From positions 62,001 through 126,000 of IMG/VR virus record IMGVR_UViG_3300023184_000024: 64,000 bases of DNA; one strand, given 5' to 3'. Below the pieces are notes generated by a model. The model was given only the letters and a program-made list of their open reading frames with translations. It was not told where the DNA came from and ran no database searches. Position numbers and translations under genes: made by a program. Shown piece by piece: positions 21,102 to 48,614 of the stretch (its first letter is position 1; every line of letters starts with the position of its first letter).

Positions 21102-21675
21102 ATTTACAAAAAACTATCCCGGTGACTATCTGCATTGCGGGCAAATGGATTTGCCGTGGGAACAAATACACCGGGACTTGCAAACGGTTGCAGACGAACA
21201 AACTAAAAATTGGTCAATCATTGACAACGGTGCTTACCAGGATAATGCCAGTGTTCTACAAAATGAATACAAAAAATACGGTTACAATCAACACAACACA
21301 CAAAGTTGGAAAACCACAAACTTTGACCCTAAAATTAACTTCGAATGGGAAAATTTAATTGCTGAAGTATTGCCCTTGGACAATGCTGTTGTTACAATAC
21401 ACAGACAAGATCCAGGACAGGTGTTGCCTTGGCACATTGATCGATTTTTCATGCACAAGCGTTTGTATCCCAACGACGAAAGACCAATTTGGAGATTTCT
21501 GGTATTCTTGGAAGAATGGCAGAATGGACATGTATTGCAGGTAGGCAACTCCGTGTTGCATCACTGGCAACAAGGTGACACTGTAGTATGGACACCAGGA
21601 ACATGGCACTTGGCTGCCAACGTAGGTCTAAATAAAAAGTGGACTGCTAACATCACAGGATTTTTAAAAGTTTAA
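21094..21675 (+). CDS. 2OG-Fe(II) oxygenase / cupin-fold protein
   Basis: LPWHID (HxD) and distal WHLAAN His; double-stranded beta-helix pattern. Confidence 0.7.
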   Translation: MIEFTKNYPGDYLHCGQMDLPWEQIHRDLQTVADEQTKNWSIIDNGAYQDNASVLQNEYKKYGYNQHNTQSWKTTNFDPKINFEWENLIAEVLPLDNAVVTIHRQDPGQVLPWHIDRFFMHKRLYPNDERPIWRFLVFLEEWQNGHVLQVGNSVLHHWQQGDTVVWTPGTWHLAANVGLNKKWTANITGFLKV

Positions 21676-23240
21676 TGACGCAAGATAATTTAACCTCTAA
21701 GCAAAACGATTACGCTGTGTTTCTACCAGCAATATCGGGCTTCTATGCCACGTTCATAGGTAAACAGCGTGATCCTATGAACGGACCATATGTGGAGCCT
21801 GCACGTATGCCACAGGGCATGCCTGACATGGAACAGATGAATTGGCTCAACAGTCAACAGGCATTGTTTCCATACAAGTGGTCATTGTACTCAGGTGGTC
21901 ACGCCAACCTAGACTTGAACAAACAAGACTGGTCAGAAGACATGGTTCGTAATCGTGAACCTGGCACTGTAATCTTAGGCGACTCGGGTGGTTTCCAAAT
22001 TGCCAAAGGCCTATGGGAAGGTGACTGGAAAGCCAACTCGGGTTGCGGCAAGGCACAAAAGAAGCGCGATGCTGTGCTCAAGTGGTTAGACGGGGTTTCT
22101 GACTATGGCATGATCTTGGATATTCCCACATGGGTTATCCATGACAAGAAAGCATCAGCGGCTTGTCAAATTACCACACTGCAAGAAGCTGTGGATGCTA
22201 CCAAGTTCAACAATGAATACTTCATGGCTCATCGCAAGGGTGTTAAAAATGGTGGTGCCAAGTTCTTGAACGTGTTGCAGGGCGCCAATCATGCTGACGC
22301 AGATCGCTGGTACGACATGATGAAACACTACTGCGATCCTGCACAATACCCTGACACACATTTCAATGGGTGGTCAATGGGCGGACAAAACATGTGCGAT
22401 GTGCATTTGGTGCTACGACGACTAGTAGCACTGCGTCACGACAACCTGCTACAGCAAGGTGTTCATGATTGGATGCACTTCTTGGGCACATCAAAGTTGG
22501 AATGGGCTGTGTTACTCACCGTGATTCAAAGAGCAGTTAGAAAATACGTTAATCCGTCTTTTACTATCTCCTTTGATTGTGCCAGCCCATTCCTTGCCAC
22601 AGCCAATGGACAGGTCTACCATGAAATTGTGTTGCCGCACGATGGCAAGTGGTCATATAGAATGAATCCCATTGTAGATGACAAAAAGTATGCCGCAGAC
22701 ACAAGGCCCTTTGGGCAAGCAGTGGTAGCAGACGGTTTGGTTGATAAGTTTGATGAAAGCCCAATCAGTCTCAATTTGCAAATGAAAGACATTTGTTATT
22801 ACAAGCCTGGTGATTTGAACAAGATCGGTAAAGAAGGCAAGACTTCGTGGGATAGTTTTAGCTATGCCTTGCTGATGGGTCACAATGTTTGGTTGCATTT
22901 GGAATCTGTGCAACGTGCCAATCGTGAGTTTGATGCAGGCTCTAGACCCAGAATGATGTGGGATGTCAACGGCAGTCATGAAAAGTTTGAGGACATTGTT
23001 GAGGCCATATTTGCCACTCCAGATCGAGCCACAGCTGAGGCTATTATTGAGAACTATGATCGTTATTGGATGGATATTGTAGGTACACGTGGATTCAAAG
23101 GTAAAAAGGCAAAGAACGCACATACTCAATTCAATGCACTGTTTGAAATTGGAAAAGTTGAAGTTGACGGGGGATCCGATGATAGTGTACAATTAGATAC
23201 ACTGGCACTAGATCAACTTGAGCAGGAACAAAAAATATGA
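21675..23240 (+). CDS. tRNA-guanine transglycosylase superfamily protein, probable DNA 7-deazaguanine transglycosylase (DpdA-like)
   Basis: LGDSGGFQ, MILDIP, LNVLQG, HFLGTS and SFDCAS TGT-type motifs; lacks the tRNA-TGT zinc motif; co-occurs with folE/queD/queE. Confidence 0.75.
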   Translation: MTQDNLTSKQNDYAVFLPAISGFYATFIGKQRDPMNGPYVEPARMPQGMPDMEQMNWLNSQQALFPYKWSLYSGGHANLDLNKQDWSEDMVRNREPGTVILGDSGGFQIAKGLWEGDWKANSGCGKAQKKRDAVLKWLDGVSDYGMILDIPTWVIHDKKASAACQITTLQEAVDATKFNNEYFMAHRKGVKNGGAKFLNVLQGANHADADRWYDMMKHYCDPAQYPDTHFNGWSMGGQNMCDVHLVLRRLVALRHDNLLQQGVHDWMHFLGTSKLEWAVLLTVIQRAVRKYVNPSFTISFDCASPFLATANGQVYHEIVLPHDGKWSYRMNPIVDDKKYAADTRPFGQAVVADGLVDKFDESPISLNLQMKDICYYKPGDLNKIGKEGKTSWDSFSYALLMGHNVWLHLESVQRANREFDAGSRPRMMWDVNGSHEKFEDIVEAIFATPDRATAEAIIENYDRYWMDIVGTRGFKGKKAKNAHTQFNALFEIGKVEVDGGSDDSVQLDTLALDQLEQEQKI

Positions 23241-23746
23241 ATAGAGAAGGACACAACAATACCAAATTCTTTACCGGGGTAGAAGTAGAACATACTCCTG
23301 CGTTCGGTAAAAAAACATTGTTTGTAGTGGGGATACAACCAGTTGCTGACATTGCGTTAAATCTAAATGGGTGTGAGCACATTTATTTTGGTGCCAATAT
23401 GAGTTTCCCGTCAAGCATACGCACCAACGATGCTGTGTTCTGGAATCCATGGGAACATATGATTGAGCACTTTTTATCCAGAGGATATACGTGTACCTTA
23501 GACATCAATGTTTCTCAAGTAGAAGGCTTGCTAGAAACTGGATTATGCGAATACAACAATTTTATTCCCATGATATCTGTTAAGTTGCCGTATGCAAGAC
23601 AACTTGGATATAATGCCACAATCAAAATTGACGACAAAGATTTTGCCGCAACCAATCCAGGAGTTTGGTGTCATAGCGTACACGATTTGATGGCAAGAGA
23701 TAAATTCACAGACTGGAATCAATATAAAAAAGATGAGGTGTTATAA
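23237..23746 (+). CDS. Conserved hypothetical protein translationally coupled to the TGT-like gene
   Basis: ATGA overlap; FTGVEVEHTP..GKKTLFVVG and HIYFGAN motifs. Confidence 0.65.
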   Translation: MNREGHNNTKFFTGVEVEHTPAFGKKTLFVVGIQPVADIALNLNGCEHIYFGANMSFPSSIRTNDAVFWNPWEHMIEHFLSRGYTCTLDINVSQVEGLLETGLCEYNNFIPMISVKLPYARQLGYNATIKIDDKDFAATNPGVWCHSVHDLMARDKFTDWNQYKKDEVL

Positions 23747-23967
23747 TGAAAACGTTTGACACATTTGAAGAAGTACAAGGAATGATGCCTTGTGTTAAGA
23801 GACCTATTATTGTACATGCTAAGAAATTTGAATTTGACTTTCGTGTAAACACACTAGAAGGCAATTACAAACAGGGCAAAGCAGGCGATTATCTAATGCG
23901 TGGCATTGATGGCGAACTGTATATTTGCGATGGTCCTATCTTTGAACGAAGCTACGATTTTGTATGA
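23746..23967 (+). CDS. Small hypothetical protein (TLEG...GDYL type)
   Basis: Coupled ORF with a VNTLEG..GKAGDYLMRG..GELY..F..SY pattern. Confidence 0.6.
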   Translation: MKTFDTFEEVQGMMPCVKRPIIVHAKKFEFDFRVNTLEGNYKQGKAGDYLMRGIDGELYICDGPIFERSYDFV

Positions 23968-24152
23968 ACGAACGAATTAAAGAACTTGCCGAACAGGCCG
24001 GCTGGGACAATCATCACTCAAAATTTGATACTAGGATTGAAAAGTTCGCCGAGTTGATTGTGAAAGAAACTTTACAAATTGCTAGAGTGGGTATGGAGTT
24101 TGGACCCAGTATGGAAGAAGCAGTTTACACTTATTTCGGAGTTGAAGAATGA
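23964..24152 (+). CDS. MNERIKELA/EKFAELIV family small protein, copy 1
   Basis: Paralog of 24149 and 24740. Confidence 0.7.
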   Translation: MNERIKELAEQAGWDNHHSKFDTRIEKFAELIVKETLQIARVGMEFGPSMEEAVYTYFGVEE

Positions 24153-24439
24153 ACGAACGAATTAAAGAACTTGCTAGGCAAACTGGCATTATTGATGTAG
24201 AACTATTGAATGATTCACAGGCTAAGATGCTTGAAAAGTTCGCCGAGTTGATTGTTCGGGAATGTATCGGATGTTGTGAACAAGTTATTAGTGATCCTGT
24301 CCCTAAATCAGTTGACACTTGGCTTAACGGTGGTTCTCAATGTATTGACCAGATTAAACAACATTTCGGAGTTGATGGTATGTCAACGGAAGATAAAAAG
24401 ACCCTAATCAAAGAATTACTAGGAGTGAAGAATGATTGA
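24149..24439 (+). CDS. MNERIKELA/EKFAELIV family small protein, copy 2
   Basis: Shares N-terminal and EKFAELIV.EC blocks. Confidence 0.7.
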   Translation: MNERIKELARQTGIIDVELLNDSQAKMLEKFAELIVRECIGCCEQVISDPVPKSVDTWLNGGSQCIDQIKQHFGVDGMSTEDKKTLIKELLGVKND

Positions 24440-24743
24440 CTACTACGAAGCACTTAAAGAAATGCACCAGGGTAATGTGGTCAAATATGTTGGCACAGTG
24501 AATGGCAATGTGATGAGCGATAATGGTGCCAGTTTCTGTATGTGCCGTGGTTGTATCTTTCTTTTTGATGCGGGCGTAATCAAGTGGAACAAGTTGGGAT
24601 ATATGGTCTACGATCCAGACTTTCGTTATGAACTCACAGGTGAAACTGTGGATCCAAGAGCATGGAAACCAGAAAAGAAAACGGACCGTAAAGAGATTAA
24701 ATCAAAGTTAGGCTACAGCCGCATAGGAAGGAATAATGTATGA
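24432..24743 (+). CDS. Hypothetical protein
   Basis: Coupled ORF with GGAG RBS. Confidence 0.6.
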   Translation: MIDYYEALKEMHQGNVVKYVGTVNGNVMSDNGASFCMCRGCIFLFDAGVIKWNKLGYMVYDPDFRYELTGETVDPRAWKPEKKTDRKEIKSKLGYSRIGRNNV

Positions 24744-24943
24744 AAAAGATACCAATGTTAGAAAAGTTTGCCGCACAAAGTCTTGTTGAACACGACGGTG
24801 AGTTGATTTTTAGTAAAGAAAAGTTCGCCGAGTTGATTGTGGAAGAATGTGCCATGGTGATTGAGAAAAATTTATATAAAAATATTGGCTGGAACACTAG
24901 CAGGAAAGTTAAACAACATTTTGGAATTGAGGAAGAAGAATGA
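24740..24943 (+). CDS. EKFAELIV family small protein, copy 3
   Basis: EKFAELIVEECA...KQHFGIEE. Confidence 0.7.
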   Translation: MKKIPMLEKFAAQSLVEHDGELIFSKEKFAELIVEECAMVIEKNLYKNIGWNTSRKVKQHFGIEEEE

Positions 24944-25422
24944 GTCAAGTATACCTAATCAAACCGCTGAAAAAGAAAAGCATTGTCTACCACGTTGAGA
25001 TGTTCCGTGACAATCCTGACGGTAGCACTAGCTGGTTTAACATCGATGAAACATATCGTTGGGGCCAGGGCTTTATTGAAGCGGATATGGACTGCAATCT
25101 TCCTTGGCAAGGCGATACAGTTGCTTACGCTAAAATCGATGCAGGCTGGGGCTGTGAGTTTGACGACAGCATCAGCATTGAGTGGGAATTCAGCGATGAC
25201 ATCACCGAACTTGATCAACAAGAACTCAAAGAACTTTACTACGAAGGTGGTGCAGGTTGGCTTTATGATGGTGAACATGATTGGCAAGAAGAAGATGCCG
25301 CAGTACATATCATTGCACCATACCAAGTTGATTTATGCGAAGAAGATGGCACAGTCATTGAAGAAAACGTAAAATTAAAACCACGTCCTACTCCTAGTAA
25401 TGACTGGCCTTTCCCAAATTAA
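24940..25422 (+). CDS. Acidic hypothetical protein
   Basis: Coupled 160-aa ORF. Confidence 0.65.
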   Translation: MSQVYLIKPLKKKSIVYHVEMFRDNPDGSTSWFNIDETYRWGQGFIEADMDCNLPWQGDTVAYAKIDAGWGCEFDDSISIEWEFSDDITELDQQELKELYYEGGAGWLYDGEHDWQEEDAAVHIIAPYQVDLCEEDGTVIEENVKLKPRPTPSNDWPFPN

Positions 25423-25432
25423 AGGAATAATT

Positions 25433-25939
25433 ATGGCAACATGGACTATTAGAACACACTACAAAAAATCTTGTGAACAGATTGAGTATTTCTACAATCG
25501 CAAAAACGATGACAAAATTGTTGTGCATGACGGATTTCGACGTGCAGAGTTTACCATCGAAACCACTGATGATGAATTTCCGCAGATTGAGTTTACAGAA
25601 GTGCCAGGTGGCGATGGTAAAACAGACAGCATAGACTTATTCAGTTTGTCTGGTGACAATATTGAATCAACTGAAATGGTTGAAATGTACGATGGTGGTT
25701 GCTGGGGCGATGTCGAAATCGAAGTTGAGGATGAAGAAGAAGCAGAACGACTGCGTGAACTTATTCAAGAAGAAGGTGCGTGGGCACTAGAAGAAGACGG
25801 CGACGGCGATTGGTATCTAAGTGATACTGAATGTTGGGTCTGGGGACCACTAGAAATTGAAGACGAAGCAGGCAATGTGCGTATCATTTGCGCAGATGAG
25901 GATGGCAATGTCATCGACTTTGTAGAGGACAACGAATGA
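25433..25939 (+). CDS. Acidic hypothetical protein
   Basis: AAGGA RBS supports ATG 25433 (MATWTIRT). Confidence 0.65.
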   Translation: MATWTIRTHYKKSCEQIEYFYNRKNDDKIVVHDGFRRAEFTIETTDDEFPQIEFTEVPGGDGKTDSIDLFSLSGDNIESTEMVEMYDGGCWGDVEIEVEDEEEAERLRELIQEEGAWALEEDGDGDWYLSDTECWVWGPLEIEDEAGNVRIICADEDGNVIDFVEDNE

Positions 25940-26262
25940 AATGGTTTGATCGATGGTTTACCAACAAATGCAAACAAGCATTGGGCATTGAGGATGATAC
26001 TCGTGAAGAAGATGCGTATCAACCTATGACAAGTTCCAAGCAAAGACGTAACACTGTTATTAGTCGTCGGGATGATATGGACCTTCCCGACGGCGGCCTA
26101 AATATCCAAGTAAAGTCTGCACTTGGTGGCAAGATTGTCATCTTCCGTAACTACGATGAGCGCAATGATCGTAACTTGTACACCACCTATCTAATTCACG
26201 ACAGTGAAAACTTTGAGTCTAGCTTGGGCAAAATCATCACCATGGAAAGTATGAAGCTATGA
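25936..26262 (+). CDS. Hypothetical protein
   Basis: Coupled ORF. Confidence 0.6.
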   Translation: MKWFDRWFTNKCKQALGIEDDTREEDAYQPMTSSKQRRNTVISRRDDMDLPDGGLNIQVKSALGGKIVIFRNYDERNDRNLYTTYLIHDSENFESSLGKIITMESMKL

Positions 26263-26606
26263 TTAAAAATATTTCTTCGTCGGGCAAGTATCTTCAGGTG
26301 CAAGGTGGAAATAATGTATATCCTTACATCAGCCCCGGTGCTGCCAATGCCGGCCAATTAAGATTTAATACTAACACAAGCAATCTTGAAATATGGGACG
26401 GGGTTGCATGGAAAGACATCAATAACACCTACACCAGCATTGGCTTAACTGGCGAAGCCGAATTGTTGTTGGATTGGGCTCGTACCAAACGTGATGAAGA
26501 TATCAAGTTCCAAGCATTGGTAGAGTCACACCCTGGCGTCCAAGACCTAAAAGAAAAATTAGATATAATGGTTGCTTTGGTCAAGCAAGAAAAGTTCATT
26601 AAATGA
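26259..26606 (+). CDS. Hypothetical protein
   Basis: Coupled ORF. Confidence 0.6.
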   Translation: MIKNISSSGKYLQVQGGNNVYPYISPGAANAGQLRFNTNTSNLEIWDGVAWKDINNTYTSIGLTGEAELLLDWARTKRDEDIKFQALVESHPGVQDLKEKLDIMVALVKQEKFIK

Positions 26607-26623: not shown

Positions 26624-26652
26624 TTGACTTTTATACAACAAAGCACTATAAT
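26624..26652 (+). promoter_or_regulatory. sigma70-type promoter
   Basis: GGTTGACT-N17-TATAAT upstream of the DpdL-like gene. Confidence 0.75.
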
Positions 26653-26678
26653 AACTTATACATTAACTGGAAAGAACT

Positions 26679-27122
26679 ATGAATCAAGAGCAACGAGATC
26701 GAATTGAAAGATGTAAACAATATGCAGATAGAAAAATCTGGGTTACCTTCCGCAAAGAAGGAATCCACAAATACCCCGCTGCCGCTAGTGATCCAATGCT
26801 GGCGACCGGTGATGAATATGATGTGTCTTTTCTTGGGGTGCCTCATCGACACATCTTTCATTTCCGAGTTTGGATCGATGTTTTTCATAATGATCGCGAT
26901 ATTGAATTCATCCAGTTCAAACGCTGGTTGGAAAAGCTCTATGCCGGCGGAACACTTGAACTCAACTTCAAAAGTTGCGAAATGATCTCAGATGATCTGT
27001 ACCTGCAGATTGCTCAAGGGTATCCTGACCGTTCGGTCTGGATTGAAGTGGCTGAAGATGGCGAGAACGGCGCTTTGATCAAATATGAAATTTCTCGCCC
27101 AAGTTTATCAATTGTAAATTAA
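26679..27122 (+). CDS. QueD-paralog T-fold protein, DpdL-like (putative 7-carboxy-7-deazaguanine decarboxylase)
   Basis: FLGVPHRHIF = LxxxHRHxF in place of QueD CxxxHGHxY; SCEMI and EVAEDGENG T-fold C-terminus. Confidence 0.65.
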   Translation: MNQEQRDRIERCKQYADRKIWVTFRKEGIHKYPAAASDPMLATGDEYDVSFLGVPHRHIFHFRVWIDVFHNDRDIEFIQFKRWLEKLYAGGTLELNFKSCEMISDDLYLQIAQGYPDRSVWIEVAEDGENGALIKYEISRPSLSIVN

Positions 27123-27133: not shown

Positions 27134-27373
27134 ATGGCCAAGCCTACAATCAAATCCAACCCACGTGTGGCCGAAATCCTCGAAGAGCTGGAAGGCTTTT
27201 TAGAATTCTGTCAAGACTATGGTTATCGGTATAACGAAGCCGACATGTATAACTTCAAGAGTTATGCATTCCAACAATACAGCAAATTCATGCAGGGCAA
27301 GAACGCTAAGAATATGTGGGACGAGGACACTCGAAGATTTGCTGGTTACACTAGTAGACCAACATATAGATGA
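27134..27373 (+). CDS. Hypothetical protein
   Basis: AAGGA RBS; 79 aa. Confidence 0.65.
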   Translation: MAKPTIKSNPRVAEILEELEGFLEFCQDYGYRYNEADMYNFKSYAFQQYSKFMQGKNAKNMWDEDTRRFAGYTSRPTYR

Positions 27374-28251
27374 TCAACATTATCTTTGTGCCTGGGACAT
27401 TTGGTACTACCGTTGAGTACGTACTAAGATCCCAGACTGTGCAAGGAACACCAATTGATACAAAAATTGCCAGTGATGGGTCAATGCACACAATAAACAA
27501 ATTGGCGCACTTTACCCATCCTGCAACAATTAAACAATTTTTCCAATCAGAGTACGATCCAACCACAATCACTACTCCTATATATGGATTTGCAGAAGTT
27601 ACCTTAGATCAAGTCTTGACAGTGTTCGAGGGGAAATCAACCCCGTTGGACAAGAATGTATTAATATATTGCTCGGACTTCAGCTGGGCAGAAATTAACA
27701 TTTTATTCAACTATCATAAAGTTGCAGTAGGAACTGAGTTTTGCAAAGGTTTACAAATCTTTGATGATCGAAGCTCGCCAGTTTTCAAGAACTATGACAC
27801 GTTTAGAGCTTGGCAATCTCAGCCCTTGTGGCAATGGAGGAACTGGTTCAGTGAGTACTATCCAAATTGGGTGTCTTCATGGATTTCCAGTGTCAATGAA
27901 GTGCCCGATTCGTTTTTAACAATTTCAAACCAAGAAATTTTATCAAACCCACACCAATCGTTGGAAAAAATTATTAGGCATTGCAATCTTGATTCTAAAT
28001 ATAGTCTCAATGAGTTTGCAACAGAATGGCAAGACAAACAACAATATGTCTTGCAAAATTATCAAACAATATGTACAATTAGAGATTGTATAGTTGACAA
28101 CCAGTATTTTGAATACAAACCGTTAAACATTGTAAGTGAAGCAATATTAAAACACAAGTTAAAAGATTCCGGATTTGTATTAAACGCAGATGGACTTGAT
28201 GTATTGCCACTTGACACTGTTGAATTGCGTAAATTACTATCATTGATATAA
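27370..28251 (+). CDS. Hypothetical protein (possible sulfotransferase/P-loop-like fold)
   Basis: IIFVPGTFGTTVEYVL N-terminal loop; assignment weak. Confidence 0.5.
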   Translation: MINIIFVPGTFGTTVEYVLRSQTVQGTPIDTKIASDGSMHTINKLAHFTHPATIKQFFQSEYDPTTITTPIYGFAEVTLDQVLTVFEGKSTPLDKNVLIYCSDFSWAEINILFNYHKVAVGTEFCKGLQIFDDRSSPVFKNYDTFRAWQSQPLWQWRNWFSEYYPNWVSSWISSVNEVPDSFLTISNQEILSNPHQSLEKIIRHCNLDSKYSLNEFATEWQDKQQYVLQNYQTICTIRDCIVDNQYFEYKPLNIVSEAILKHKLKDSGFVLNADGLDVLPLDTVELRKLLSLI

Positions 28252-28262: not shown

Positions 28263-29462
28263 ATGAGAAAACTATTTTACATGGGCTTGGAAAGTTACGA
28301 AGCCCGTTACACACTACAGCTCACGGAATGGAACCGACGTGTGTTTGACCGTAGAGGTCTTGATGTCGTTTATGTTCCTGGAACCACTATTGACAATAGC
28401 CAAGCTATTTCAGTGGGGCAAGTGCTAGACGCACACGGACGCAGTTATTTCGGCATGAGCCAAATGATGAACTTAGTTCAACTAATGAAGAATGGAGAAG
28501 TTACCAATGCGGATGTTATCTACTTTGAAGACATGTTTCAACCCGGCATCGAGAGTCTTCCTTACATCCTTAATCAAGTTCCTGCTGATCAACGTCCTCG
28601 TGTGTATGTTCGTTGTCTTGCTCAGTCCATTGATCCTGATGACTTCGTACATGTATGGGGTATGGCGAAATGGATGGGCCTCTACGAACAAATGGTTAAC
28701 GAGTTCGTGGACGGGGTTCTTGCCACCAACGAGGAGATGGTTGCTCATATGCGCATTGCTGGATGGCGTGCTCCTATATATAATATTAGTGGCCTAGCAT
28801 TTGGCAAATCGGAAGTGCTAGAGCGCATTGGTGGTGTAGAGAATATCCGGCCTTTCCAGGATCGCAAGAGACGAGTTGGGTTTGCCGCAAGGTTTGATCA
28901 GGAAAAACAACCAGACTTTTACATGGACTTGATTGAGATGTATCACAATCAAGGACACCATAAGGACATCGAGTTTGCTATTTTCTCAGGCGGGCCGTTG
29001 CGTAGCAATAATCCAAAGTACTTGGAACGTGCTTACAAACTGGCAGGAGAGGGCAAACTCAACATTTATGAGGATCTAAAGAAGAACGATTACTATGATC
29101 TCCTCAACGATACTCGTGTGCTGTTTAATTGTGCTCTCCAAGATTGGGTCTCAAACACTGTCAGTGAAGCAGATACCCTCGGAGCCAACGTTCTATATCC
29201 TGCTTATCGCAGTTTCCCTGAAACTTTTGCAAATGACCCTAACAGGCTCTACATTCCCTGGAGTATAGATGATGCTTTCCATAAATTAGAAAATCTCCTT
29301 GACTCTCCACATCACAACATGGGCCTGATCAGTGACTGGAACGATGGCACAATTGATCGTGTTGTTGATATCATTGACGGTAATGGCGAGCAATGGAATC
29401 GTGCTGGTAATCGTTACCGGGACCATGTGGCTGGTGCTAAGTATCCTGTAAGGAAAATTTAA
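28263..29462 (+). CDS. GT-B fold glycosyltransferase
   Basis: FAARFDQEKQPD and LFNCALQDWVSNTVSEA..LGANVLYP (GT4-like E-x7-E region). Confidence 0.75.
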   Translation: MRKLFYMGLESYEARYTLQLTEWNRRVFDRRGLDVVYVPGTTIDNSQAISVGQVLDAHGRSYFGMSQMMNLVQLMKNGEVTNADVIYFEDMFQPGIESLPYILNQVPADQRPRVYVRCLAQSIDPDDFVHVWGMAKWMGLYEQMVNEFVDGVLATNEEMVAHMRIAGWRAPIYNISGLAFGKSEVLERIGGVENIRPFQDRKRRVGFAARFDQEKQPDFYMDLIEMYHNQGHHKDIEFAIFSGGPLRSNNPKYLERAYKLAGEGKLNIYEDLKKNDYYDLLNDTRVLFNCALQDWVSNTVSEADTLGANVLYPAYRSFPETFANDPNRLYIPWSIDDAFHKLENLLDSPHHNMGLISDWNDGTIDRVVDIIDGNGEQWNRAGNRYRDHVAGAKYPVRKI

Positions 29463-29465: not shown

Positions 29466-30509
29466 ATGAATAAACAAACAGTTTTAGTCACTGGCGGCGC
29501 TGGATTTATCGGGCATCACATGATTCGGCGTTTGCTCAAGCATCCCGAGTACAATATTATTTCCCTGGATCGATTGGATTTTTCAGGTAACTTAAATCGC
29601 CTAGCTGAACTTGCACAAGAATTTGGCACAGACGAAATGCGTAGATTGCGTGTAATTCATCATGACCTTAAAGCAGAAATCAACCCACAACTAGCTGGAC
29701 AAATTGGCGACGTAGATTACATTGTTCACATGGCCGCTGGCAGTCATGTCACACGCAGTATTGAAAACCCTATGTTGTTTGTGCAAGACAATGTTGTAGG
29801 CACTTGTAACTTGTTGGACTATGCACGATTTTATTTGCCCAATCTAAAGAAGTTTATTAACTTTGGCACAGATGAAGTATTTGGATCAGCCCCCGAAGGT
29901 GTTGAGTATCAAGAGTATGATCGATACAACAGTCGCAGTCCATACTCAGCTACCAAAGCCGGCGCAGAAGAATTATGTGTGGCCTATGAAAACACATTTG
30001 GCATGCCCATCTACTGTACACATACCATGAATGTTTTTGGCGAGCGCCAGTCACCAGAAAAGTTTCTTGGGTTGGTCATGCGCAAGGTACTAGAAGATCA
30101 AGAAGTCACCATCCATTGTGACGAAAAGACCGGCACTGAAAGTGGGCTACGTCATTGGGTGCATGCCGCAGACGTTGCCGATGCTACTATGTTTATCATG
30201 AACTTGCCGCACAAAGAATTCCCCTTGCCCAATGACTTTGGTGGGGCCACTTGCCCCAAGTTTAACATTGTGGGACAGCGAGAAATCAGCAACCTCGAGG
30301 TGGCTCAACGTGTTGCTGACATAATGAAACGCAAGCTCAATTACACAATGGTAGGGTATGACACACAACGTCCCGGACATGACTTCCGGTACGCACTTAG
30401 TGGAGAATACATGAAGAGTCTAGGTTGGGAACCCAAATACGACTTTGACACTCGTCTTGAGCAAATGATAAACTGGACTCTTAAAAACTCTCGTTGGTTA
30501 AAGCTATGA
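29466..30509 (+). CDS. rmlB: dTDP-glucose 4,6-dehydratase (extended SDR)
   Basis: VTGGAGFIG, HMAAGSHV, TDEVFG, YSATK. Confidence 0.88.
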   Translation: MNKQTVLVTGGAGFIGHHMIRRLLKHPEYNIISLDRLDFSGNLNRLAELAQEFGTDEMRRLRVIHHDLKAEINPQLAGQIGDVDYIVHMAAGSHVTRSIENPMLFVQDNVVGTCNLLDYARFYLPNLKKFINFGTDEVFGSAPEGVEYQEYDRYNSRSPYSATKAGAEELCVAYENTFGMPIYCTHTMNVFGERQSPEKFLGLVMRKVLEDQEVTIHCDEKTGTESGLRHWVHAADVADATMFIMNLPHKEFPLPNDFGGATCPKFNIVGQREISNLEVAQRVADIMKRKLNYTMVGYDTQRPGHDFRYALSGEYMKSLGWEPKYDFDTRLEQMINWTLKNSRWLKL

Positions 30510-31714
30510 ATCACATACACGAAAATACAGAATGCCTTGCATGCGGCAGCACTAATATTCAAACGGCATTGGACCTTGGAGTTCAGCCGCTGGCAAACAG
30601 TTATAAGAAGTCTGTTGCTGATGCCGAAGAACGTTACCCATTAGCAGTGCGACTTTGCCAGGACTGCTATCATTTACAACTAAGCCACACAGTTGATCCT
30701 GAAATCATCTACAAAAACTATTTGTATGCCACAGGCACAAACAAAACCATTCGAGAATACTCCCAGTGGTTTGCTAATTTTTGTTTAGAATATCTTCCAG
30801 GGTCATCTAGTGTTCTTGACATTGGTTGCAACGATGGTACACAGCTAGATTACTTCAAGGAATTGGGGTTTAATACCTATGGTATTGATCCAGCTGAAAA
30901 CTTACACGAACGCAGTAGTGCAAATCACTTTGTGATATGTGACTTTTTTGGTCCCGATGCTGTGAGTCGTTTAGCCACAGCTGATTACAATATAATCACA
31001 GCACAAAATGTTTGTGCACACAATCCTGATCCTTTGAGATTTTTAAAATCATGCCGTGAGTTAATGCGTGAAGATACTTTGTTGTTTGTACAAACCAGCC
31101 AGGCCGATATGGTGTTGCACAATGAGTTTGACACCATTTATCATGAGCATGTCAACTTTTTTAATGCCAACAGTATGTTCAAATTGGCACAACGTGCTGG
31201 ACTACACCTAGTTGATGTTGTCAAGGCACCAATACATGGTAACAGTTATATCTTTGTACTGAGTTTAAAAAATAGTCGTCAGCATCACGTGCAAAATATC
31301 ATTGCCATGGAAGCACCATTGCTTGAAAAACGCACATATCAGCAATGGCGAGACATTGTAGAATTAAATGTAGATGCATTAAAATTCCATGTTGACCAAT
31401 ATCGCAGTCAAGGATACCGGTTAGTTGGATATGGTGCCGCAGCCAAAGGTAATACCTTGTTGAACTATGCCGAACTTGATTTAGATTTTATTGTTGACGA
31501 CAATCCGCTTAAACAAGGATTGTACACACCCGGACGTGCCATCCCAATTGTGGGCATTGAACGAGTAAAAAATTTAACTCAACAAGATCGTGTATTGTTT
31601 ATTCCGTTGGCTTGGAATTTCTTTGATGAGATTCGAGAACGCATTCTAGCTGTTCGTAAAAATGATCAAGATGAATTTCTTAGATATTTCCCCACAGTAG
31701 AATTGGTCAAATGA
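30506..31714 (+). CDS. NDP-hexose C-methyltransferase family protein
   Basis: N-terminal CLACG...CQDC zinc site; LDIGCNDG; IYHEHVNFF; GYGAAAKGNTLLNY. Confidence 0.88.
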   Translation: MNHIHENTECLACGSTNIQTALDLGVQPLANSYKKSVADAEERYPLAVRLCQDCYHLQLSHTVDPEIIYKNYLYATGTNKTIREYSQWFANFCLEYLPGSSSVLDIGCNDGTQLDYFKELGFNTYGIDPAENLHERSSANHFVICDFFGPDAVSRLATADYNIITAQNVCAHNPDPLRFLKSCRELMREDTLLFVQTSQADMVLHNEFDTIYHEHVNFFNANSMFKLAQRAGLHLVDVVKAPIHGNSYIFVLSLKNSRQHHVQNIIAMEAPLLEKRTYQQWRDIVELNVDALKFHVDQYRSQGYRLVGYGAAAKGNTLLNYAELDLDFIVDDNPLKQGLYTPGRAIPIVGIERVKNLTQQDRVLFIPLAWNFFDEIRERILAVRKNDQDEFLRYFPTVELVK

Positions 31715-34383: not shown

Positions 34384-35101
34384 GTTACTGACCAGTAAGT
34401 ATGATCCCAAAGATTATTCTATAGACTATGCTCACGGTCAACCAGTTCCTTGGATTGTATTTGATGACTTTTTACCCGAAGACATTTTACTTGCAGTCCA
34501 AGAAGAAATAGAATTAATCCCGAAACACATGTGGAGCAAATTTACACGCAACGGCAGTTTTATGTTAGAGTGTAATAATCTTAAGTATGCACCCAGGATA
34601 CGAGACTTGGTATTAAATTTTAACAGTGGAGAATTCATTCATTGGTTAGAAGCAATCACTGGGACTACAAAAGTGATACCAGACCCGCACTTGATTGGTG
34701 CTGGGTTAATGAGGTGTGGTGCAGGACACAATTTAAAACTTCACACCGACTTTAACTGGAATGAACAACTCCATCTCAATAGAAAACTCAGCATGATTTT
34801 ATACGTCAGCAAAGAATGGGAAACTGAATGGGGTGGGTCTTTGGAATTTTGGGATTTTGAAAAAACTCAGTGTCTACATCGAGTTGACCCCAAACCCAAT
34901 CGGCTGTTGATCTGGGATTATGATGAGCGTCTTATACACGGTCATCCTTTGCCCATCGACTGTCCAGATGATGCCAGCAGAGATGGGCTTAGATTATTCT
35001 ACTTCGGTAGTAACGCAACGCCGTTGAATGCGCCGCATCGTAGTCTTTATTGGTTCGATGATCAAAACAATAAATCGTATGATCGTAGAGAAAATCAATA
35101 A
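34370..35101 (+). CDS. 2OG-Fe(II) oxygenase (prolyl-4-hydroxylase-like)
   Basis: LKLHTDFN (HxD), WGGSLEFW, IHGH, R..LRLFY. Confidence 0.85.
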   Translation: MIDIELLTSKYDPKDYSIDYAHGQPVPWIVFDDFLPEDILLAVQEEIELIPKHMWSKFTRNGSFMLECNNLKYAPRIRDLVLNFNSGEFIHWLEAITGTTKVIPDPHLIGAGLMRCGAGHNLKLHTDFNWNEQLHLNRKLSMILYVSKEWETEWGGSLEFWDFEKTQCLHRVDPKPNRLLIWDYDERLIHGHPLPIDCPDDASRDGLRLFYFGSNATPLNAPHRSLYWFDDQNNKSYDRRENQ

Positions 35102-35166: not shown

Positions 35167-35847
35167 ATGAGTTATAACAAAACTAAATGCGACCCCGAGT
35201 TGGGTCAACGTGTACATCAACATTTACTCAAATGTGGAGTCGAGACTCCAACATTTCAACACAGTGTTGATCGCAAAGACAAAATTGATCTAATAGAGCG
35301 TGACTTCAAACACATCATGGAAGTGTTGGGGTTAGATCTCAGTGACGATAGCCTCATGGACACTCCCAAACGTGTGGCCAAGATGTATGTCAATGAAATC
35401 TTTTGGGGGCTAGACTACGAAGCATTTCCCAAATGTACCACAGTAGACAACAAAATGAAGTACGATGAAATGGTGGTCGAGCGCAATGTCAACGTGCAAA
35501 GTAACTGCGAGCACCACTTTGTTGTCATCGATGGGGTGGCCACTGTGGGTTACATTCCCAAACAAAAAGTACTTGGCTTGTCCAAGATTAATCGTGTTGT
35601 TGAATACTTTAGCAAACGCCCTCAAATTCAAGAACGCTTGACCGAGCAAGTGTACTATGCTCTACAATATATTTTGGAAACAGACGACATTGCAGTTGTT
35701 GTAGATGCGCAACACTACTGTGTCAAGAGTCGTGGTGTTGAGGATGTGGGTAGCTCAACGGTTACCAGCAAGCTTGGTGGAGTATTTAAAAATGATCCAT
35801 CGGTGCGTGTAGAGTTTATGAACATTGTCAACAATTGTAATCGATAA
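35167..35847 (+). CDS. folE: GTP cyclohydrolase I
   Basis: TPKRVAK, SNCEHHF, GLSKINR, RPQIQERLT, HYCVKSRG. Confidence 0.96.
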   Translation: MSYNKTKCDPELGQRVHQHLLKCGVETPTFQHSVDRKDKIDLIERDFKHIMEVLGLDLSDDSLMDTPKRVAKMYVNEIFWGLDYEAFPKCTTVDNKMKYDEMVVERNVNVQSNCEHHFVVIDGVATVGYIPKQKVLGLSKINRVVEYFSKRPQIQERLTEQVYYALQYILETDDIAVVVDAQHYCVKSRGVEDVGSSTVTSKLGGVFKNDPSVRVEFMNIVNNCNR

Positions 35848-41775: not shown

Positions 41776-42327
41776 ATGCAATCATCAACACAAGAATTAA
41801 TCAACCACATGGAAGATAACTTCTCAAACACTAGACCGGTAGTTTACAAATATACTAGTACCAAAGAGTATCACGACGCATTTCCATGTGCGTACAGACA
41901 ATGGAGGGCCGACAGTCATTGTAACTTGATACACGGTTATTCGTTTAGTATGAAATTTTACTTTGGCACCAACGACCTAGATGTTCGCAACTGGGCGGCC
42001 GACTATGGTGGTTTAAAAGAACTAAAAAAGACACTAGAAGATCAATTTGACCACACTCTAATTGTGGCACAAGATGATCCAGAGATGGCAACATACAACT
42101 TGTTGGTAGAGAAAAAAATGGCCAAGGTAGTTGTACTGCCTAAATTGGGATGTGAAGGCTTGAGTGACATGCTGTACAAGTATGTGAATGGTGTTTACAT
42201 TCCAGAGATGTGGGGACCAGGAGAGGCTGCTAGACTTTGGTGTTATCGTGTGGAAGTGCGCGAAACGCAAGCAAACATGGCTTTCCGTGAAGGTCACCGC
42301 GAGTGGAATGAAGACCTATTTGCATAA
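41776..42327 (+). CDS. queD: 6-carboxy-5,6,7,8-tetrahydropterin synthase
   Basis: SHCNLIHGYS (CxxxHG), LEDQFDHTLI, GCEGL, EVRETQAN. Confidence 0.88.
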   Translation: MQSSTQELINHMEDNFSNTRPVVYKYTSTKEYHDAFPCAYRQWRADSHCNLIHGYSFSMKFYFGTNDLDVRNWAADYGGLKELKKTLEDQFDHTLIVAQDDPEMATYNLLVEKKMAKVVVLPKLGCEGLSDMLYKYVNGVYIPEMWGPGEAARLWCYRVEVRETQANMAFREGHREWNEDLFA

Positions 42328-46587: not shown

Positions 46588-47715
46588 TTGTTAATGACTA
46601 GCCTGTTAGACACCGAGCAACATTGGGATAATAAAAATTGCGAATACGATTTGCAGACTTATAACTGGCCTGCGTGGACTCTGAAAGTCATACAAGAAAT
46701 TGTACCCGAAGTCACAGAGTTAGAAAAATTACACACATTCCTTGACCCTGCTGGCGTTGTCAAGGTCACACAACATGTGCAAAATGCATGTAGTCGACAA
46801 GAATTTATGACAATGTTTGATCAATTTGCCAATGACATTGTACCTCAAAGGATTGACAACAAGCAATACCTAGTGCAAAGACAAGGCACACTTAGAGTTG
46901 TTGTCCCAAATCAATCTTCTTACCATCGACGCTTGCCATTTCACAATGATTTTTTTGCTGGTAACGGTCGTGGATTAAGAACCGTTTGGATCCCGTTGAC
47001 CAAATCATATTATTCTAATACCATGTGGATGGTTGATCTGCCCACATCTAGGCGACTGGCACGACAGTTGGTTCAAGAAAAATGGAAACTGGAACGGTTT
47101 GAAAAAGAATGCATGAAGTATGCCTTTCCAGTTAACCTAAGCCCTGGACAATGCCATTTGTTTTTACAAGAGCACTTACATGGCAATGTCAACAATGAAG
47201 AAAACTATACCAGGGTGAGTTTAGATATGCGAATAATGGTCAGAGGCGAAGAGTACGGCCGCAAGACACCCGGGGGCTATCTACGGTTACCCGGTGATTA
47301 CGGCACCCCCAACAAAGATTATTCAGGCAAAACTTTTTTAACCTACGCTAGTTGGAATTCAGAATACTCAAGGCACATTCCGTTGCCCATGCAAAGATCT
47401 ATAATAGAACGATACTGTTCATCAAACAACATTAGATACAACGAGTATGCAGCCGATTTTGATCATTTGGATTATCAACCAGCATTGGAACAATGCATAC
47501 AACACAAGCCAGACGGTATAGTACTAACTAGTATGTTTTCATTGACAGATGATAAAACACGCAGAGACGAACTACTTGACTTGGCACTAGACTTGGGTGT
47601 ACAATTACATTTTGCCAACGAATGTTGTGCATTATGCAATCGGGTAGATCTCGAGAAAGTACAAACTTATTTAAACTTTGGGTTGGTCAAAAGCCGACCA
47701 TATGAATGGGAATAA
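46588..47715 (+). CDS. Fusion of 2OG-Fe(II) oxygenase and sporadic-carbohydrate-cluster-like domain
   Basis: LPFHND (HxD), HLHGNVNN.E..TRVSLDMR; C-terminal IPLPMQR.II..YC...DGIVL.S.FSL...LHFANE. Confidence 0.6.
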   Translation: MLMTSLLDTEQHWDNKNCEYDLQTYNWPAWTLKVIQEIVPEVTELEKLHTFLDPAGVVKVTQHVQNACSRQEFMTMFDQFANDIVPQRIDNKQYLVQRQGTLRVVVPNQSSYHRRLPFHNDFFAGNGRGLRTVWIPLTKSYYSNTMWMVDLPTSRRLARQLVQEKWKLERFEKECMKYAFPVNLSPGQCHLFLQEHLHGNVNNEENYTRVSLDMRIMVRGEEYGRKTPGGYLRLPGDYGTPNKDYSGKTFLTYASWNSEYSRHIPLPMQRSIIERYCSSNNIRYNEYAADFDHLDYQPALEQCIQHKPDGIVLTSMFSLTDDKTRRDELLDLALDLGVQLHFANECCALCNRVDLEKVQTYLNFGLVKSRPYEWE

Positions 47716-47729
47716 CACAGGAAGCGCAC

Positions 47730-48614
47730 ATGGAAAAAATTACATACACAGAAATCTTTTACAGTTTGCAAGGCGAGGGACGTTGGGCAGGAGTGCCCAG
47801 TGTTTTCTTCCGCACATTTGGCTGTAATCTTCGTTGCAAGAAATTCGGCAGGGATCGCAATGAAGTCATCGACGGGCCTAACCCCGAAGTTGTTGAGATC
47901 ATTCGCAACATTGACAAGTACAACAAGTTTGAAGAATTGCCATTGGTGACTTCGGGCTGTGACACTTATGCCAGTATCTATCCAGAATTTAAAAAGTTCA
48001 ACGAGCAGGGCACAGTTGAAGAAATTGTGGGCAAGATGCATGACATGATCCCGGGACAGCAATGGAGTGGAGTCAACGGGCTAGATGACGTACACTTGGT
48101 GATCACAGGTGGTGAACCGTTTTTGGCATATCAACAACTGTACCCAGAAATGATTCAACAGTGTCGGGATCGTGGACTGAGGAATCTAACATTCGAAACC
48201 AACGGTACTCAACCATTGTACGACAATGTTCGTGAATACTTGTTTGAAGAGTTTACTCGCCATGGCAGGGATTATGACCGGTTGACATTCAGTGTCAGTC
48301 CCAAGCTTCCGTGTTCAGGTGAGTCTTGGGACAAGGCCATCAATCCCAAGATCATCAAAGAGTATGAAAGTGTGGGCATGACTTACTTGAAGTTTGTTGT
48401 GGGCACTGAGCAGGACTTGCGTGATGTAGACCGTGCTGTGGAAGAGTTCCGTAGTGCAGGGTTTGGTGGGCCTGTGTATTTGATGCCCATTGGTGGTGTG
48501 CCGGGTGTATACAATCTAAATACACAACAAGTTGCCACCTTGGCCATGCGCCGTGGCTATCGCTACAGTCCAAGACTGCAAGTTGATATCTGGCGCAATG
48601 CCTGGGGTACATAA
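47730..48614 (+). CDS. queE: 7-carboxy-7-deazaguanine synthase (radical SAM)
   Basis: EIFYSLQGEG, FFRTFGCNLRC..(40 aa)..GCDT, ITGGEP, ETNGT, SVSPKL, PRLQVDIW. Confidence 0.9.
   Translation: MEKITYTEIFYSLQGEGRWAGVPSVFFRTFGCNLRCKKFGRDRNEVIDGPNPEVVEIIRNIDKYNKFEELPLVTSGCDTYASIYPEFKKFNEQGTVEEIVGKMHDMIPGQQWSGVNGLDDVHLVITGGEPFLAYQQLYPEMIQQCRDRGLRNLTFETNGTQPLYDNVREYLFEEFTRHGRDYDRLTFSVSPKLPCSGESWDKAINPKIIKEYESVGMTYLKFVVGTEQDLRDVDRAVEEFRSAGFGGPVYLMPIGGVPGVYNLNTQQVATLAMRRGYRYSPRLQVDIWRNAWGT

What the first reader, a model, noticed from the sequence alone, without database searches (positions are those of the whole stretch)
26624..27122. QueD paralog with LxxxHRHxF signature under its own sigma70 promoter
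Seen: FLGVPHRHIF replaces the catalytic Cys motif of QueD, while a canonical QueD is separately encoded at 41776. Known, from my recollection of the phage deazaguanine literature: DpdL, a QueD-like CDG decarboxylase producing 7-deazaguanine, has this motif. Inference: it predicts unsubstituted 7-deazaguanine (dDG) in DNA, and its separate promoter could tune the dCDG/dDG ratio.
Basis: partly seen in the sequence, partly recalled or inferred. Interest (0 to 1): 0.65.

Follow-up and report, generated by a model that had tools for sequence, protein, structure and literature searches.

The report
Phage DpdL, predicted 7-deazaguanine maker
The gene is a genuine member of the DpdL family, QueD-like proteins that some phages are thought to use to replace guanine in their DNA with 7-deazaguanine. 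It lies in a 353-kb uncultured jumbo phage beside a previously unannotated DNA transglycosylase and a conserved glycosyltransferase, but the enzyme's chemistry has never been shown for any family member.

Summary
Window 26679-27122 (+) encodes a 147-aa protein with L52-x3-H56-R-H58-x-F60, preceded by TTGACT-N17-TATAAT at 26624-26652.

It is a DpdL-family member:
- 35% identical to the founding DpdL, Cellulophaga phage phiST CGPG_00067, and 57% identical to Acidovorax phage ACP17 gp125.
- Its AlphaFold model matches E. coli QueD best.
- Leu52 sits where QueD has its catalytic Cys.

The complete 352,754-bp phage genome encodes FolE, a phage-type QueD, QueE and a divergent tRNA-guanine-transglycosylase-fold protein at 21675-23240. 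I take that protein to be the DpdA. No QueC or QueF was found. This is the gene set of phages whose DNA carries 2'-deoxy-7-deazaguanine (dDG).

Caveats:
- CDG decarboxylation by DpdL is only a published prediction, and reconstitution in E. coli failed.
- The "canonical" QueD reads CxxxHGY, as in other phage QueDs.
- The promoter is probably real but not a conserved feature. In many relatives dpdA, orf169 and dpdL abut or overlap, and here a 2.9-kb insertion separates them. The dCDG/dDG "tuning" idea therefore has no support.

New here: a conserved module, dpdA-orf169-dpdL-orf79-GT4 glycosyltransferase, is shared with ACP17 (no orf79 homologue seen), and in part (dpdA, GT, dpdL) with PA5oct, X1 and BUCT-ZZ01.

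The parts
26624..26652 (+). Sigma-70-like promoter, TTGACT-N17-TATAAT, 26 nt upstream of the dpdL start codon
   Evidence: 11 of 12 matches, the best site in 19-30 kb. It belongs to a genome-wide class: 49 sites with at least 11 of 12 matches on the coding strand against 6 on the other strand, while shuffles give about 12 for both strands together. No promoter-like site (at least 9 of 12) precedes dpdL where it abuts orf169; sites appear only in some loci with a gap. Function was not tested.
26679..27122 (+). dpdL: 147-aa QueD-like T-fold protein. It keeps H30, H56 and H58, which align with three conserved His of E. coli QueD (two lie in its CxxxHGH zinc motif), and has Leu52 in place of the QueD catalytic Cys. 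Predicted 7-carboxy-7-deazaguanine decarboxylase.
   Evidence: tblastn: phiST CGPG_00067 35% identity (E 2e-9), ACP17 gp125 57% (E 2e-39), Phosso 69%. phrog_17812 E 7e-36. The model has pLDDT 88 and its best PDB match is E. coli QueD 4ntk (probability 1.0, TM 0.73). hhalign maps L52 to the QueD Cys.
21675..23240 (+). DpdA candidate: 521-aa divergent tRNA-guanine-transglycosylase-fold protein with invariant DSGGFQ, GW-x-MGGQ, HFLGTS and FDCASP motifs
   Evidence: The model has pLDDT 88, and the 50 best Foldseek PDB hits listed are all bacterial or archaeal tRNA-guanine transglycosylases (E 2e-8, probability 1.0). It is 31% identical over its full length to PA5oct gp168. HMMER with Pfam TGT finds nothing. 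A homologue is present in 74 of 80 related loci.
23237..23746 (+). orf169: conserved protein of unknown function between dpdA and dpdL, homologous to ACP17 gp122
   Evidence: A homologue is present in 79 of 80 loci. In many relatives it overlaps dpdA and dpdL by 4 nt. ACP17 gp122 matches at E 4e-10. No Pfam, PHROG, PADLOC, PDB or Atlas hit.
23746..26606 (+). Variable 2.9-kb insertion of small, poorly conserved ORFs that separates orf169 from dpdL in this genome
   Evidence: Its ORFs have homologues in only 0-23 of 80 related loci. In 35 of 78 relatives orf169 lies within 40 nt of dpdL.
27134..27373 (+). orf79: conserved small protein immediately downstream of dpdL
   Evidence: A homologue is present in 71 of 80 loci, usually 9-12 nt after dpdL. 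No family hit.
28263..29462 (+). GT4/GT1-like (GT-B) glycosyltransferase conserved next to dpdL across distant phages
   Evidence: Weak Pfam hits to Glycos_transf_1 and Glyco_trans_1_2. ACP17 gp124 gives the same weak hits plus GT4-conflict. Atlas feature hits point to GT1/GT4 clusters. Homologous to ACP17 gp124, PA5oct gp167, Phosso gene 224, X1 WEM34306 and BUCT-ZZ01 UTS52032 (67% identity). Present in 61 of 80 loci.
35167..35847 (+). FolE, GTP cyclohydrolase I
   Evidence: PF01227 E 1e-61.
41776..42327 (+). Phage-type QueD (CPH4 synthase family) with a CxxxHGY motif
   Evidence: PF01242 E 5e-15 and phrog_2389 E 1e-34. hhalign to E. coli QueD gives probability 95%. phiSM and RHEph04 QueD share the HGY motif.
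47706..48614 (+). QueE, CDG synthase (radical SAM)
   Evidence: phrog_2076 'QueE-like radical SAM domain' E 1e-49. tblastn with ACP17 QueE matches the cluster-motif region.

Best explanation
The gene encodes a DpdL-family enzyme, a QueD-like T-fold protein. It keeps three conserved His of QueD (H30, H56, H58) and the conserved acidic residues (E76, E101, E126), but has Leu where QueD has its catalytic Cys.

Proposed pathway in the infected cell:
1. Phage FolE, QueD and QueE convert GTP to 7-carboxy-7-deazaguanine (CDG).
2. No QueC is encoded, so the pathway cannot continue to preQ0.
3. DpdL removes the carboxyl group, giving 7-deazaguanine.
4. The divergent TGT-fold protein at 21675-23240 (DpdA) exchanges this base for guanine in phage DNA after replication.
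5. The resulting dDG-containing DNA resists restriction.

Shown here: family membership, fold, motif, gene complement and operon conservation. Inferred from the literature and by analogy: the decarboxylation step, the substrate of DpdA and the presence of dDG. The upstream sigma-70-like promoter most likely restarts transcription after a lineage-specific 2.9-kb insertion split an ancestral dpdA-orf169-dpdL-orf79-GT operon.
For: - Homology to the named DpdLs, as defined in the paper.
- Conserved residues across the family.
- QueD-like model and residue mapping of L52 onto the QueD Cys.
- C-terminal profile match to phage QueD, probability 80%.
- FolE, QueD and QueE are present.
- The only QueC-like signal is an NAD synthase. 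The only QueF-like signal is a weak, below-cutoff match (E 0.02) inside the FolE ORF.
- TGT fold of the 521-aa neighbour.
- phiST, with the same gene set, has 100% dDG.
- PA5oct carries a 55%-identical DpdL together with homologues of the TGT-fold protein and the GT. It resists G-dependent restriction enzymes and is targeted by nucleases that sense modified G.
- Same order and strand of the five module genes in 43 of 43 loci that hold all five.
Against: - No DpdL has been shown to decarboxylate CDG. phiST and ACP17 dpdL plus dpdA gave no dDG in E. coli.
- HMMER-level searches do not link P0001 to PTPS. The link rests on a predicted structure and low-probability hhalign alignments.
- The DpdA candidate is very far from the phiST DpdA3 (hhalign probability 1%) and only weakly similar to the ACP17-type DpdA.
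- A conserved glycosyltransferase and two unknown ORFs in the same operon are not explained by a simple CDG-to-DG-to-dDG scheme.
- No DNA chemistry is available for this uncultured phage.
Confidence: 0.55

Rival explanations
1. DpdL is one component of a larger pathway. The conserved module (DpdA, orf169, DpdL, orf79, GT4 glycosyltransferase) produces a more elaborate guanine replacement than plain dDG, for example a glycosylated or otherwise decorated deazapurine. In that case DpdL's reaction need not be a simple decarboxylation of free CDG.
For: - A GT4-like gene sits beside dpdL in ACP17, PA5oct, Phosso, X1, BUCT-ZZ01 and 61 of 80 metagenomic relatives, often in a tight operon.
- No ThyA-family hydroxymethylase exists in the genome to supply a pyrimidine acceptor.
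- NDP-sugar genes follow the GT directly.
- The two-gene reconstitution failed, and the authors themselves suggested that other enzymes may be required.
- The chemical nature of the PA5oct G modification is unreported.
Against: - phiST makes plain dDG, and no homologue of the window's or ACP17's GT was detected in the ~10 kb around its dpdL.
- dDG offers no obvious acceptor group at C7.
- The GT could serve an unrelated target such as host envelope or virion glycans, given the adjacent sugar genes.
- Adjacency alone is weak evidence.
Confidence: 0.2
2. DpdA inserts CDG into DNA first, and DpdL then decarboxylates dCDG within the DNA. A transient or partial dCDG/dDG mixture, would then be possible.
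For: The paper considers that DpdA3 may insert CDG as a common precursor. dCDG does occur in one archaeal virus (abstract).
Against: - The authors' structural model of DpdL favours action on the free base.
- A QueD-type T-fold pocket, as modelled here, binds small pterins and purines and has no evident DNA-binding surface. This point is my inference.
- No dCDG was detected in phiST DNA.
Confidence: 0.12
3. The protein is a second CPH4-synthase-like or other pterin-handling T-fold enzyme that supports the phage QueD, not a decarboxylase.
For: It is QueD-like in fold and keeps three conserved His of QueD. The co-encoded QueD has Tyr in place of one motif His.
Against: - The QueD Cys is required for activity and is Leu here.
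- The HGY-type QueD also occurs in phages that encode QueC, where dpdL was not found (phiSM; RHEph04), so it evidently works alone.
- In the paper, and in the genomes checked here (the window's own, with only weak PP-loop matches in five large relatives), DpdL goes with absence of QueC.
Confidence: 0.05

Closest known systems
DpdL of Cellulophaga phage phiST (CGPG_00067, YP_007673448.1), the founding member (Cui, Hutinet et al., NAR 2023, PMC10516641)
   Same: Homologous at 35% identity (tblastn E 2e-9; pairwise 4e-14). Same LxxxHRHxF motif and the same conserved His, Glu and S-C-E residues. Both phages encode FolE, QueD and QueE and lack QueC.
   Different: The window protein has a 17-residue N-terminal helix and an insert at residues 43-47. 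Its partner transglycosylase is not the 259-aa DpdA3 of phiST but a 521-aa TGT-fold protein. The window's module also carries a GT4-like gene, orf169 and orf79, for which no homologue was found in the ~10 kb around phiST dpdL.
ACP17 gp125, PA5oct gp166, Phosso XYS97381 and Xanthomonas X1 WEM34308 (DpdL homologues in large isolated phages)
   Same: 50-69% identity. Neighbourhood: the GT4-like gene accompanies dpdL in all four. A TGT-like gene is next to dpdL in ACP17, X1 and PA5oct and lies elsewhere in Phosso. An orf169 homologue is clear only in ACP17 (gp122; weak in Phosso). QueE and FolE are nearby.
   Different: Those genes are all annotated as hypothetical. PA5oct and Ahp1 read HFH instead of HRH. 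ACP17, X1 and ZZ01 use a different TGT-like subtype from the window, PA5oct and Phosso.
E. coli QueD (6-carboxytetrahydropterin synthase; PDB 4ntk)
   Same: It is the best structural match to the model (TM 0.73, probability 1.0). Three conserved His and the conserved Glu positions align.
   Different: Only 17% identity and no HMMER-level similarity. The catalytic Cys is replaced by Leu, and Gly of HGH by Arg. The predicted substrate is CDG rather than dihydroneopterin triphosphate.

Membership tests
DpdL (proposed CDG decarboxylase) | Sequence homology to phiST CGPG_00067 and the ACP17 DpdL | tested here: met
   tblastn E 2e-9 at 35% identity (phiST) and E 2e-39 at 57% (ACP17) against 2.3 Gb of phage records. 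The hit coordinates fall on CGPG_00067 and gp125.
DpdL (proposed CDG decarboxylase) | LxxxHRHxF in place of the QueD motif CxxxHGH | tested here: met
   L52, H56, R57, H58 and F60 are present. L, both H and F are invariant across nine diverse homologues. hhalign places L52 opposite the E. coli QueD Cys (low probability, but consistent with the paper).
DpdL (proposed CDG decarboxylase) | QueD/PTPS-like T-fold | tested here: met
   The AlphaFold2 model has pLDDT 88.2. The ranks listed down to 25 in PDB are QueD/PTPS-family chains, led by E. coli QueD. Pfam HMMER finds nothing for this protein, and equally nothing for the named DpdLs.
DpdL (proposed CDG decarboxylase) | Genome encodes FolE, QueD, QueE and a DpdA but no QueC | tested here: met
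   FolE, QueD and QueE. TGT-fold DpdA candidate. The QueC Pfam model gives only a PP-loop match inside an NAD synthase. The genome is a complete record with terminal repeats.
DpdL (proposed CDG decarboxylase) | Decarboxylation of CDG to 7-deazaguanine, and dDG in virion DNA | not testable with these tools
   This is not demonstrated even for the prototype, where heterologous expression gave no dDG. dDG was measured only in phiST, phi19:2 and phi13:1.
DpdA / tRNA-guanine transglycosylase superfamily (protein at 21675-23240) | TGT TIM-barrel fold with catalytic Asp motifs (DSGGFQ and FDC-type) | tested here: met
   The 50 best Foldseek PDB hits listed are all TGTs. D103-SGGFQ and F300-D-C-A-S-P are invariant in 47 sequences. 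Equating these motifs with the catalytic residues of bacterial TGT rests on my memory.
DpdA / tRNA-guanine transglycosylase superfamily (protein at 21675-23240) | Membership of a named DpdA subfamily (bDpdA, DpdA1-4) | tested here: inconclusive
   No match to PF01702, to the PHROGs hit by phiST DpdA3 (phrog_20335, phrog_19058) or to that of ACP17 gp123 (phrog_10773). hhalign to phiST DpdA3 gives probability 1% and to the ACP17/X1 type E 8e-4. The paper's supplementary tables are not held.
QueD (CPH4 synthase; protein at 41776-42327) | PF01242 domain with the CxxxHGH motif | tested here: inconclusive
   PF01242 scores above its cut-off (55.9 bits against 22.4). hhalign to E. coli QueD gives 95% and the Cys is present. 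However, the motif reads CxxxHGY, and the NCBIfam QueD equivalog scores below its cut-off (34 against 89 bits). phiSM and RHEph04 QueD have the same variant and sit next to QueC.

The most novel reading that the evidence does not exclude
Jumbo and large phages of this kind (this lineage, PA5oct, ACP17, X1, Phosso, BUCT-ZZ01) may not stop at plain dDG. The conserved dpdA-orf169-dpdL-orf79-GT4 module would then make a further-decorated, possibly glycosylated, deazaguanine. Alternatively, the GT and the small ORFs may be the missing obligatory partners whose absence explains why the dpdL-plus-dpdA reconstitution failed. Either way, it would be a new DNA hypermodification pathway that is abundant in environmental viromes.
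Probability: 0.2. Interest if true: 0.8.

Novelty: new member of a known kind. Interest (0 to 1): 0.5.

Why it matters
DpdL is the one unproven step in the only proposed route to dDG, a modification that fully replaces G in phage DNA. This work shows three things:
- The family is very common in uncultured large phages: at least 598 IMG/VR contigs, and thousands of protein clusters.
- In this branch it is paired with a TGT-fold protein that databases and GenBank records label as hypothetical.
- It is embedded in a conserved five-gene module that includes a glycosyltransferase.

That gives a concrete list of genes to add to the failed reconstitution experiment. It also nominates isolated phages (PA5oct, ACP17) in which the chemistry of the modified G can be settled.

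Tried and rejected
Searches on the DpdL protein (P0001) that found nothing useful:
- Pfam, NCBIfam and PADLOC scans gave no hit.
- phmmer and profile hmmsearch against PDB sequences gave only noise, plus a weak PTPS hit (2dj6, E 0.76).
- BLASTP of P0001 against the window QueD was not significant.

Searches for a DpdA that failed:
- No match to Pfam TGT (PF01702), phrog_20335, phrog_19058 or phrog_10773 in the genome.
- tblastn with phiST DpdA3 and ACP17 gp123/gp124 found nothing.
- Pfam TGT also misses the transglycosylases of phiST, ACP17, Phosso and PA5oct. These blanks therefore reflect low sensitivity, not absence.
- A profile of the 521-aa family against PDB sequences found nothing. Only the fold search resolved it.

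Other dead ends:
- The second IMG/VR scan, with a diverse alignment, returned the same close relatives.
- orf169 has no Atlas hit. Its matches to the 'Cake' designer repeat proteins are an artefact of summing 3-bit repeats.
- hhalign of the DpdL profile against single sequences gave low probabilities. I used these only for residue mapping.
- The large representative-protein search was not used, as the operators advised, because the family question was already settled.
- The paper's supplementary tables are not held.

Ideas considered and dropped:
- The HGY-type QueD is specific to dpdL phages, or forms a complementary heteromer with DpdL. The same QueD type sits beside QueC in phiSM and RHEph04.
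- The GT glycosylates hydroxymethyl-pyrimidines. The genome has no ThyA-family gene.

Full report
**Observation.** The ORF at 26679-27122 (+) encodes 147 residues, kept as P0001.
- Residues 51-60 read F-L-G-V-P-H-R-H-I-F, which fits LxxxHRHxF exactly.
- Upstream, TTGACT (26624) and TATAAT (ending 26652) are separated by 17 nt. At 11 of 12 matches this is the best sigma-70-like site between 19 and 30 kb.

**What the protein is.** HMMER-level scans say nothing. Pfam, NCBIfam, PADLOC and PDB sequences give no hit, and only the unnamed phrog_17812 matches (E 7e-36).
- tblastn against 50,697 phage records finds 28 records: Sinorhizobium phage Phosso (69%), Acidovorax phage ACP17 (57%, E 2e-39), eleven PA5oct-like Pseudomonas jumbo phages (55%), and Cellulophaga phage phiST and its relatives (35%, E 2e-9).
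- The phiST hit is CGPG_00067 and the ACP17 hit is gp125.
- The NAR 2023 paper (PMC10516641) names CGPG_00067 DpdL. It states that the QueD motif CxxxHGH becomes LxxxHRHxF, and it used the ACP17 homologue as a second example.
- In nine homologues sharing 37-67% identity with the window's protein, the invariant residues are G28, H30, P33, A35, L52, H56, H58, F60, I66, V68, H70, R73, E76, F77, S99, C100, E101 and E126.
- R57 is not invariant. PA5oct and Aeromonas phage Ahp1 read HFH.
- An AlphaFold2 model built on 48 relatives (pLDDT 88.2) matches E. coli QueD best (4ntk; probability 1.0, TM 0.73, 17% identity), followed by other PTPS/QueD chains.
- hhalign against E. coli QueD has low probability. 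Its alignment nevertheless puts H30, H56 and H58 opposite three conserved histidines of QueD (two lie in its CxxxHGH zinc motif) and L52 opposite the catalytic Cys.
- The C-terminal half aligns to the phage QueD family at 80% probability.
- The named DpdLs also fail to hit Pfam PTPS by HMMER. The blank for P0001 is therefore expected.

**Genome context.** The window is bases 62001-126000 of a 352,754-bp virus record with direct terminal repeats, estimated 100% complete.
- Its DNA polymerase is closest to Phosso (50%), Agrobacterium phage Atu_ph07 (47%) and the 121Q-like jumbo phages (42%).
- The window encodes three pathway genes:
  - FolE at 35167-35847 (PF01227, E 1e-61).
  - A QueD at 41776-42327.
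  - QueE at 47706-48614 (phrog_2076, E 1e-49).
- The only QueC-like signal in the whole genome is the PP-loop of an NAD synthase.
- The only QueF-like signal is a weak, below-cutoff match (E 0.02) inside the FolE ORF.
- Five large related contigs likewise show only weak PP-loop matches.

**The missing DpdA.** Pfam TGT, the PHROGs hit by phiST DpdA3 and ACP17 gp123, and tblastn all found nothing.
- Pfam TGT also finds nothing in phiST, ACP17, Phosso or PA5oct. These blanks reflect low sensitivity.
- Comparing the genes that travel with dpdL solved the problem.
- The 521-aa ORF at 21675-23240 is 31% identical over its full length to PA5oct gp168 (E 2e-79). It is weakly similar to ACP17 gp123 (E 0.005-0.013).
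- ACP17 gp123 is in turn 38% identical to the Xanthomonas phage X1 gene annotated as queuine tRNA-ribosyltransferase, which sits directly upstream of X1's dpdL.
- An alignment of 47 relatives shows invariant DSGGFQ, GW-x-MGGQ, HFLGTS and FDCASP. From memory, these resemble the catalytic motifs of bacterial TGT.
- Its model (pLDDT 88.1) returns tRNA-guanine transglycosylases as all 50 best PDB matches listed (E 2e-8, probability 1.0).
- I therefore take it to be the DpdA of this phage. It belongs to a subtype shared with PA5oct-like phages and Phosso, where every copy is annotated as hypothetical.
- I could not assign it to the published subfamilies DpdA1-4.

Homologue counts for the five module genes:

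| Gene | Loci with a homologue (of 80) |
|---|---|
| dpdA candidate | 74 |
| orf169 (23237-23746) | 79 |
| dpdL | 79 |
| orf79 (27134-27373) | 71 |
| 399-aa protein at 28263-29462 | 61 |

- All 43 loci that hold all five genes have them in the same order and on the same strand.
- In many loci the junctions are 4-nt overlaps or gaps of about 10 nt.
- The 399-aa protein has weak GT1-family Pfam hits, and so does its ACP17 homologue gp124. Atlas feature search places it among GT1/GT4 clusters.
- Homologues of it lie next to dpdL in ACP17, PA5oct, Phosso, X1 and Synechococcus phage BUCT-ZZ01, where the copy is 67% identical.
- orf169 is homologous to ACP17 gp122 and has no detectable family.
- The genome has no ThyA-family hydroxymethylase that could provide a pyrimidine acceptor for the GT.
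- In the ~10 kb around dpdL in phiST, which makes plain dDG, no homologue of this GT was found.

**The promoter.**
- Genome-wide, sites with at least 11 of 12 matches number 49 on the coding strand and 6 on the other. Shuffled sequence gives about 12 for both strands together. This is a genuine promoter class, and the dpdL site belongs to it.
- It is not a conserved feature of dpdL, however. In 35 of 78 relatives dpdL abuts orf169 and no promoter-like site precedes it. Sites appear only where extra DNA lies between the two genes.
- In this genome a 2.9-kb block of poorly conserved small ORFs (23746-26606) is inserted there. A 293-aa ORF (27370-28251, homologues in 9 loci) is also inserted between orf79 and the GT.
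- The simplest reading is that the promoter restores transcription after the insertion.
- The idea that it tunes a dCDG/dDG ratio has no support. No dCDG was found in phiST DNA, and nothing here suggests that CDG is inserted.

**The "canonical" QueD.** The protein at 41776 passes the Pfam PTPS threshold and aligns to E. coli QueD at 95% probability.
- Its motif is C49-x3-H53-G-Y55, which is invariant in 19 phage QueDs.
- The same HGY form occurs in phiSM and RHEph04 QueD, both encoded beside QueC.
- So this is the usual phage QueD type. It keeps the Cys and is not specific to dpdL phages.

**Mechanism and confidence.** Membership of the DpdL family is close to certain. The function is an inference.
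- The paper proposes alkaline, metal-assisted decarboxylation of the free base CDG, followed by insertion of 7-deazaguanine by DpdA.
- The evidence is circumstantial. phiST DNA is fully dDG and phiST lacks QueC, but co-expression of dpdL and dpdA from phiST or ACP17 in E. coli gave no dDG.
- Independent support that this branch modifies G comes from PA5oct. It resists G-dependent restriction enzymes and is targeted by nucleases that sense modified G (PMC12191111).
- An earlier comparative study also credited PA5oct with a deazaguanine synthesis and incorporation system (PMC7824862).
- I put about 0.55 on the plain CDG-to-DG-to-dDG scheme.
- I put about 0.2 on a more elaborate product, or on the GT and small ORFs being required.
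- Smaller weights go to decarboxylation after insertion and to a non-decarboxylase role.

**Limits.**

Noticed in passing
window 21675-23240: A 521-aa TGT-fold protein (DpdA candidate) belongs to a family whose every copy found in isolated phages (PA5oct gp168 and relatives, Phosso, Vibrio phage 2.275.O) is annotated as hypothetical. Pfam TGT does not detect it.
   Followed up: yes
window 28263-29462, and L090:8349-9515: The GT4-like protein is 67% identical to a protein of the freshwater Synechococcus phage BUCT-ZZ01. The two phages' DpdLs share only 38% identity and their TGT-like proteins are of different subtypes. This suggests that the GT is unusually constrained or was recently exchanged.
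   Followed up: partly
window 29466-39161: A run of sugar-nucleotide and tailoring genes lies between the GT and QueD, interrupted by FolE: 4,6-dehydratase, C-methyltransferase, epimerase/reductase, aminotransferase-like, 2OG-Fe oxygenase, hexapeptide acyltransferase, MFS transporter and AMP-binding ligase. Only the epimerase is widely shared with relatives.
   Followed up: partly
window 35167-35847: The FolE here is 93% and 73% identical to those of only two relatives, and about 35% identical to the FolE of the other 45 related loci. It is 63% identical to ACP17 FolE. This looks like replacement by a xenologous copy.
   Followed up: no
window 41776-42327: The QueD motif is CxxxHGY instead of CxxxHGH, with an invariant His directly before the Cys. 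The variant is shared by phiST, ACP17, phiSM and RHEph04 QueD. What it means for metal binding in phage QueD is unknown.
   Followed up: partly
genome-wide; in the window for example 53043, 53436, 54726, 55031, 55896, 61149-61966: There are 49 near-consensus TTGAC(C/A/T)-N17-TATAAT sites on the coding strand against 6 on the other. They occur in clusters ahead of short ORFs, which looks like arrays of early genes that depend on host sigma-70.
   Followed up: partly
window 39212-44761: Several auxiliary genes of unclear role: a subtilase (653 aa), a HIT-family hydrolase directly upstream of QueD (conserved in 26 loci), a peroxiredoxin, a class II aldolase and a Bax1-inhibitor-like membrane protein.
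   Followed up: no
window 47706-48614: This QueE is 302 aa long against a 247-position PHROG profile. Pfam radical-SAM models score only weakly, which suggests an insertion of about 50 residues.
   Followed up: no
L090:3441-3902 (Synechococcus phage BUCT-ZZ01): A gene annotated as xanthine-guanine phosphoribosyltransferase sits between QueE and QueD in a dpdL-bearing cyanophage. This hints that the free deazapurine base might also be turned into a nucleotide there.
   Followed up: no
G000:C1:17711-18547 (outside the window): The phage encodes an NAD synthase (PF02540, E 2e-50). Its PP-loop produces the only weak QueC-like signal in the genome.
   Followed up: yes
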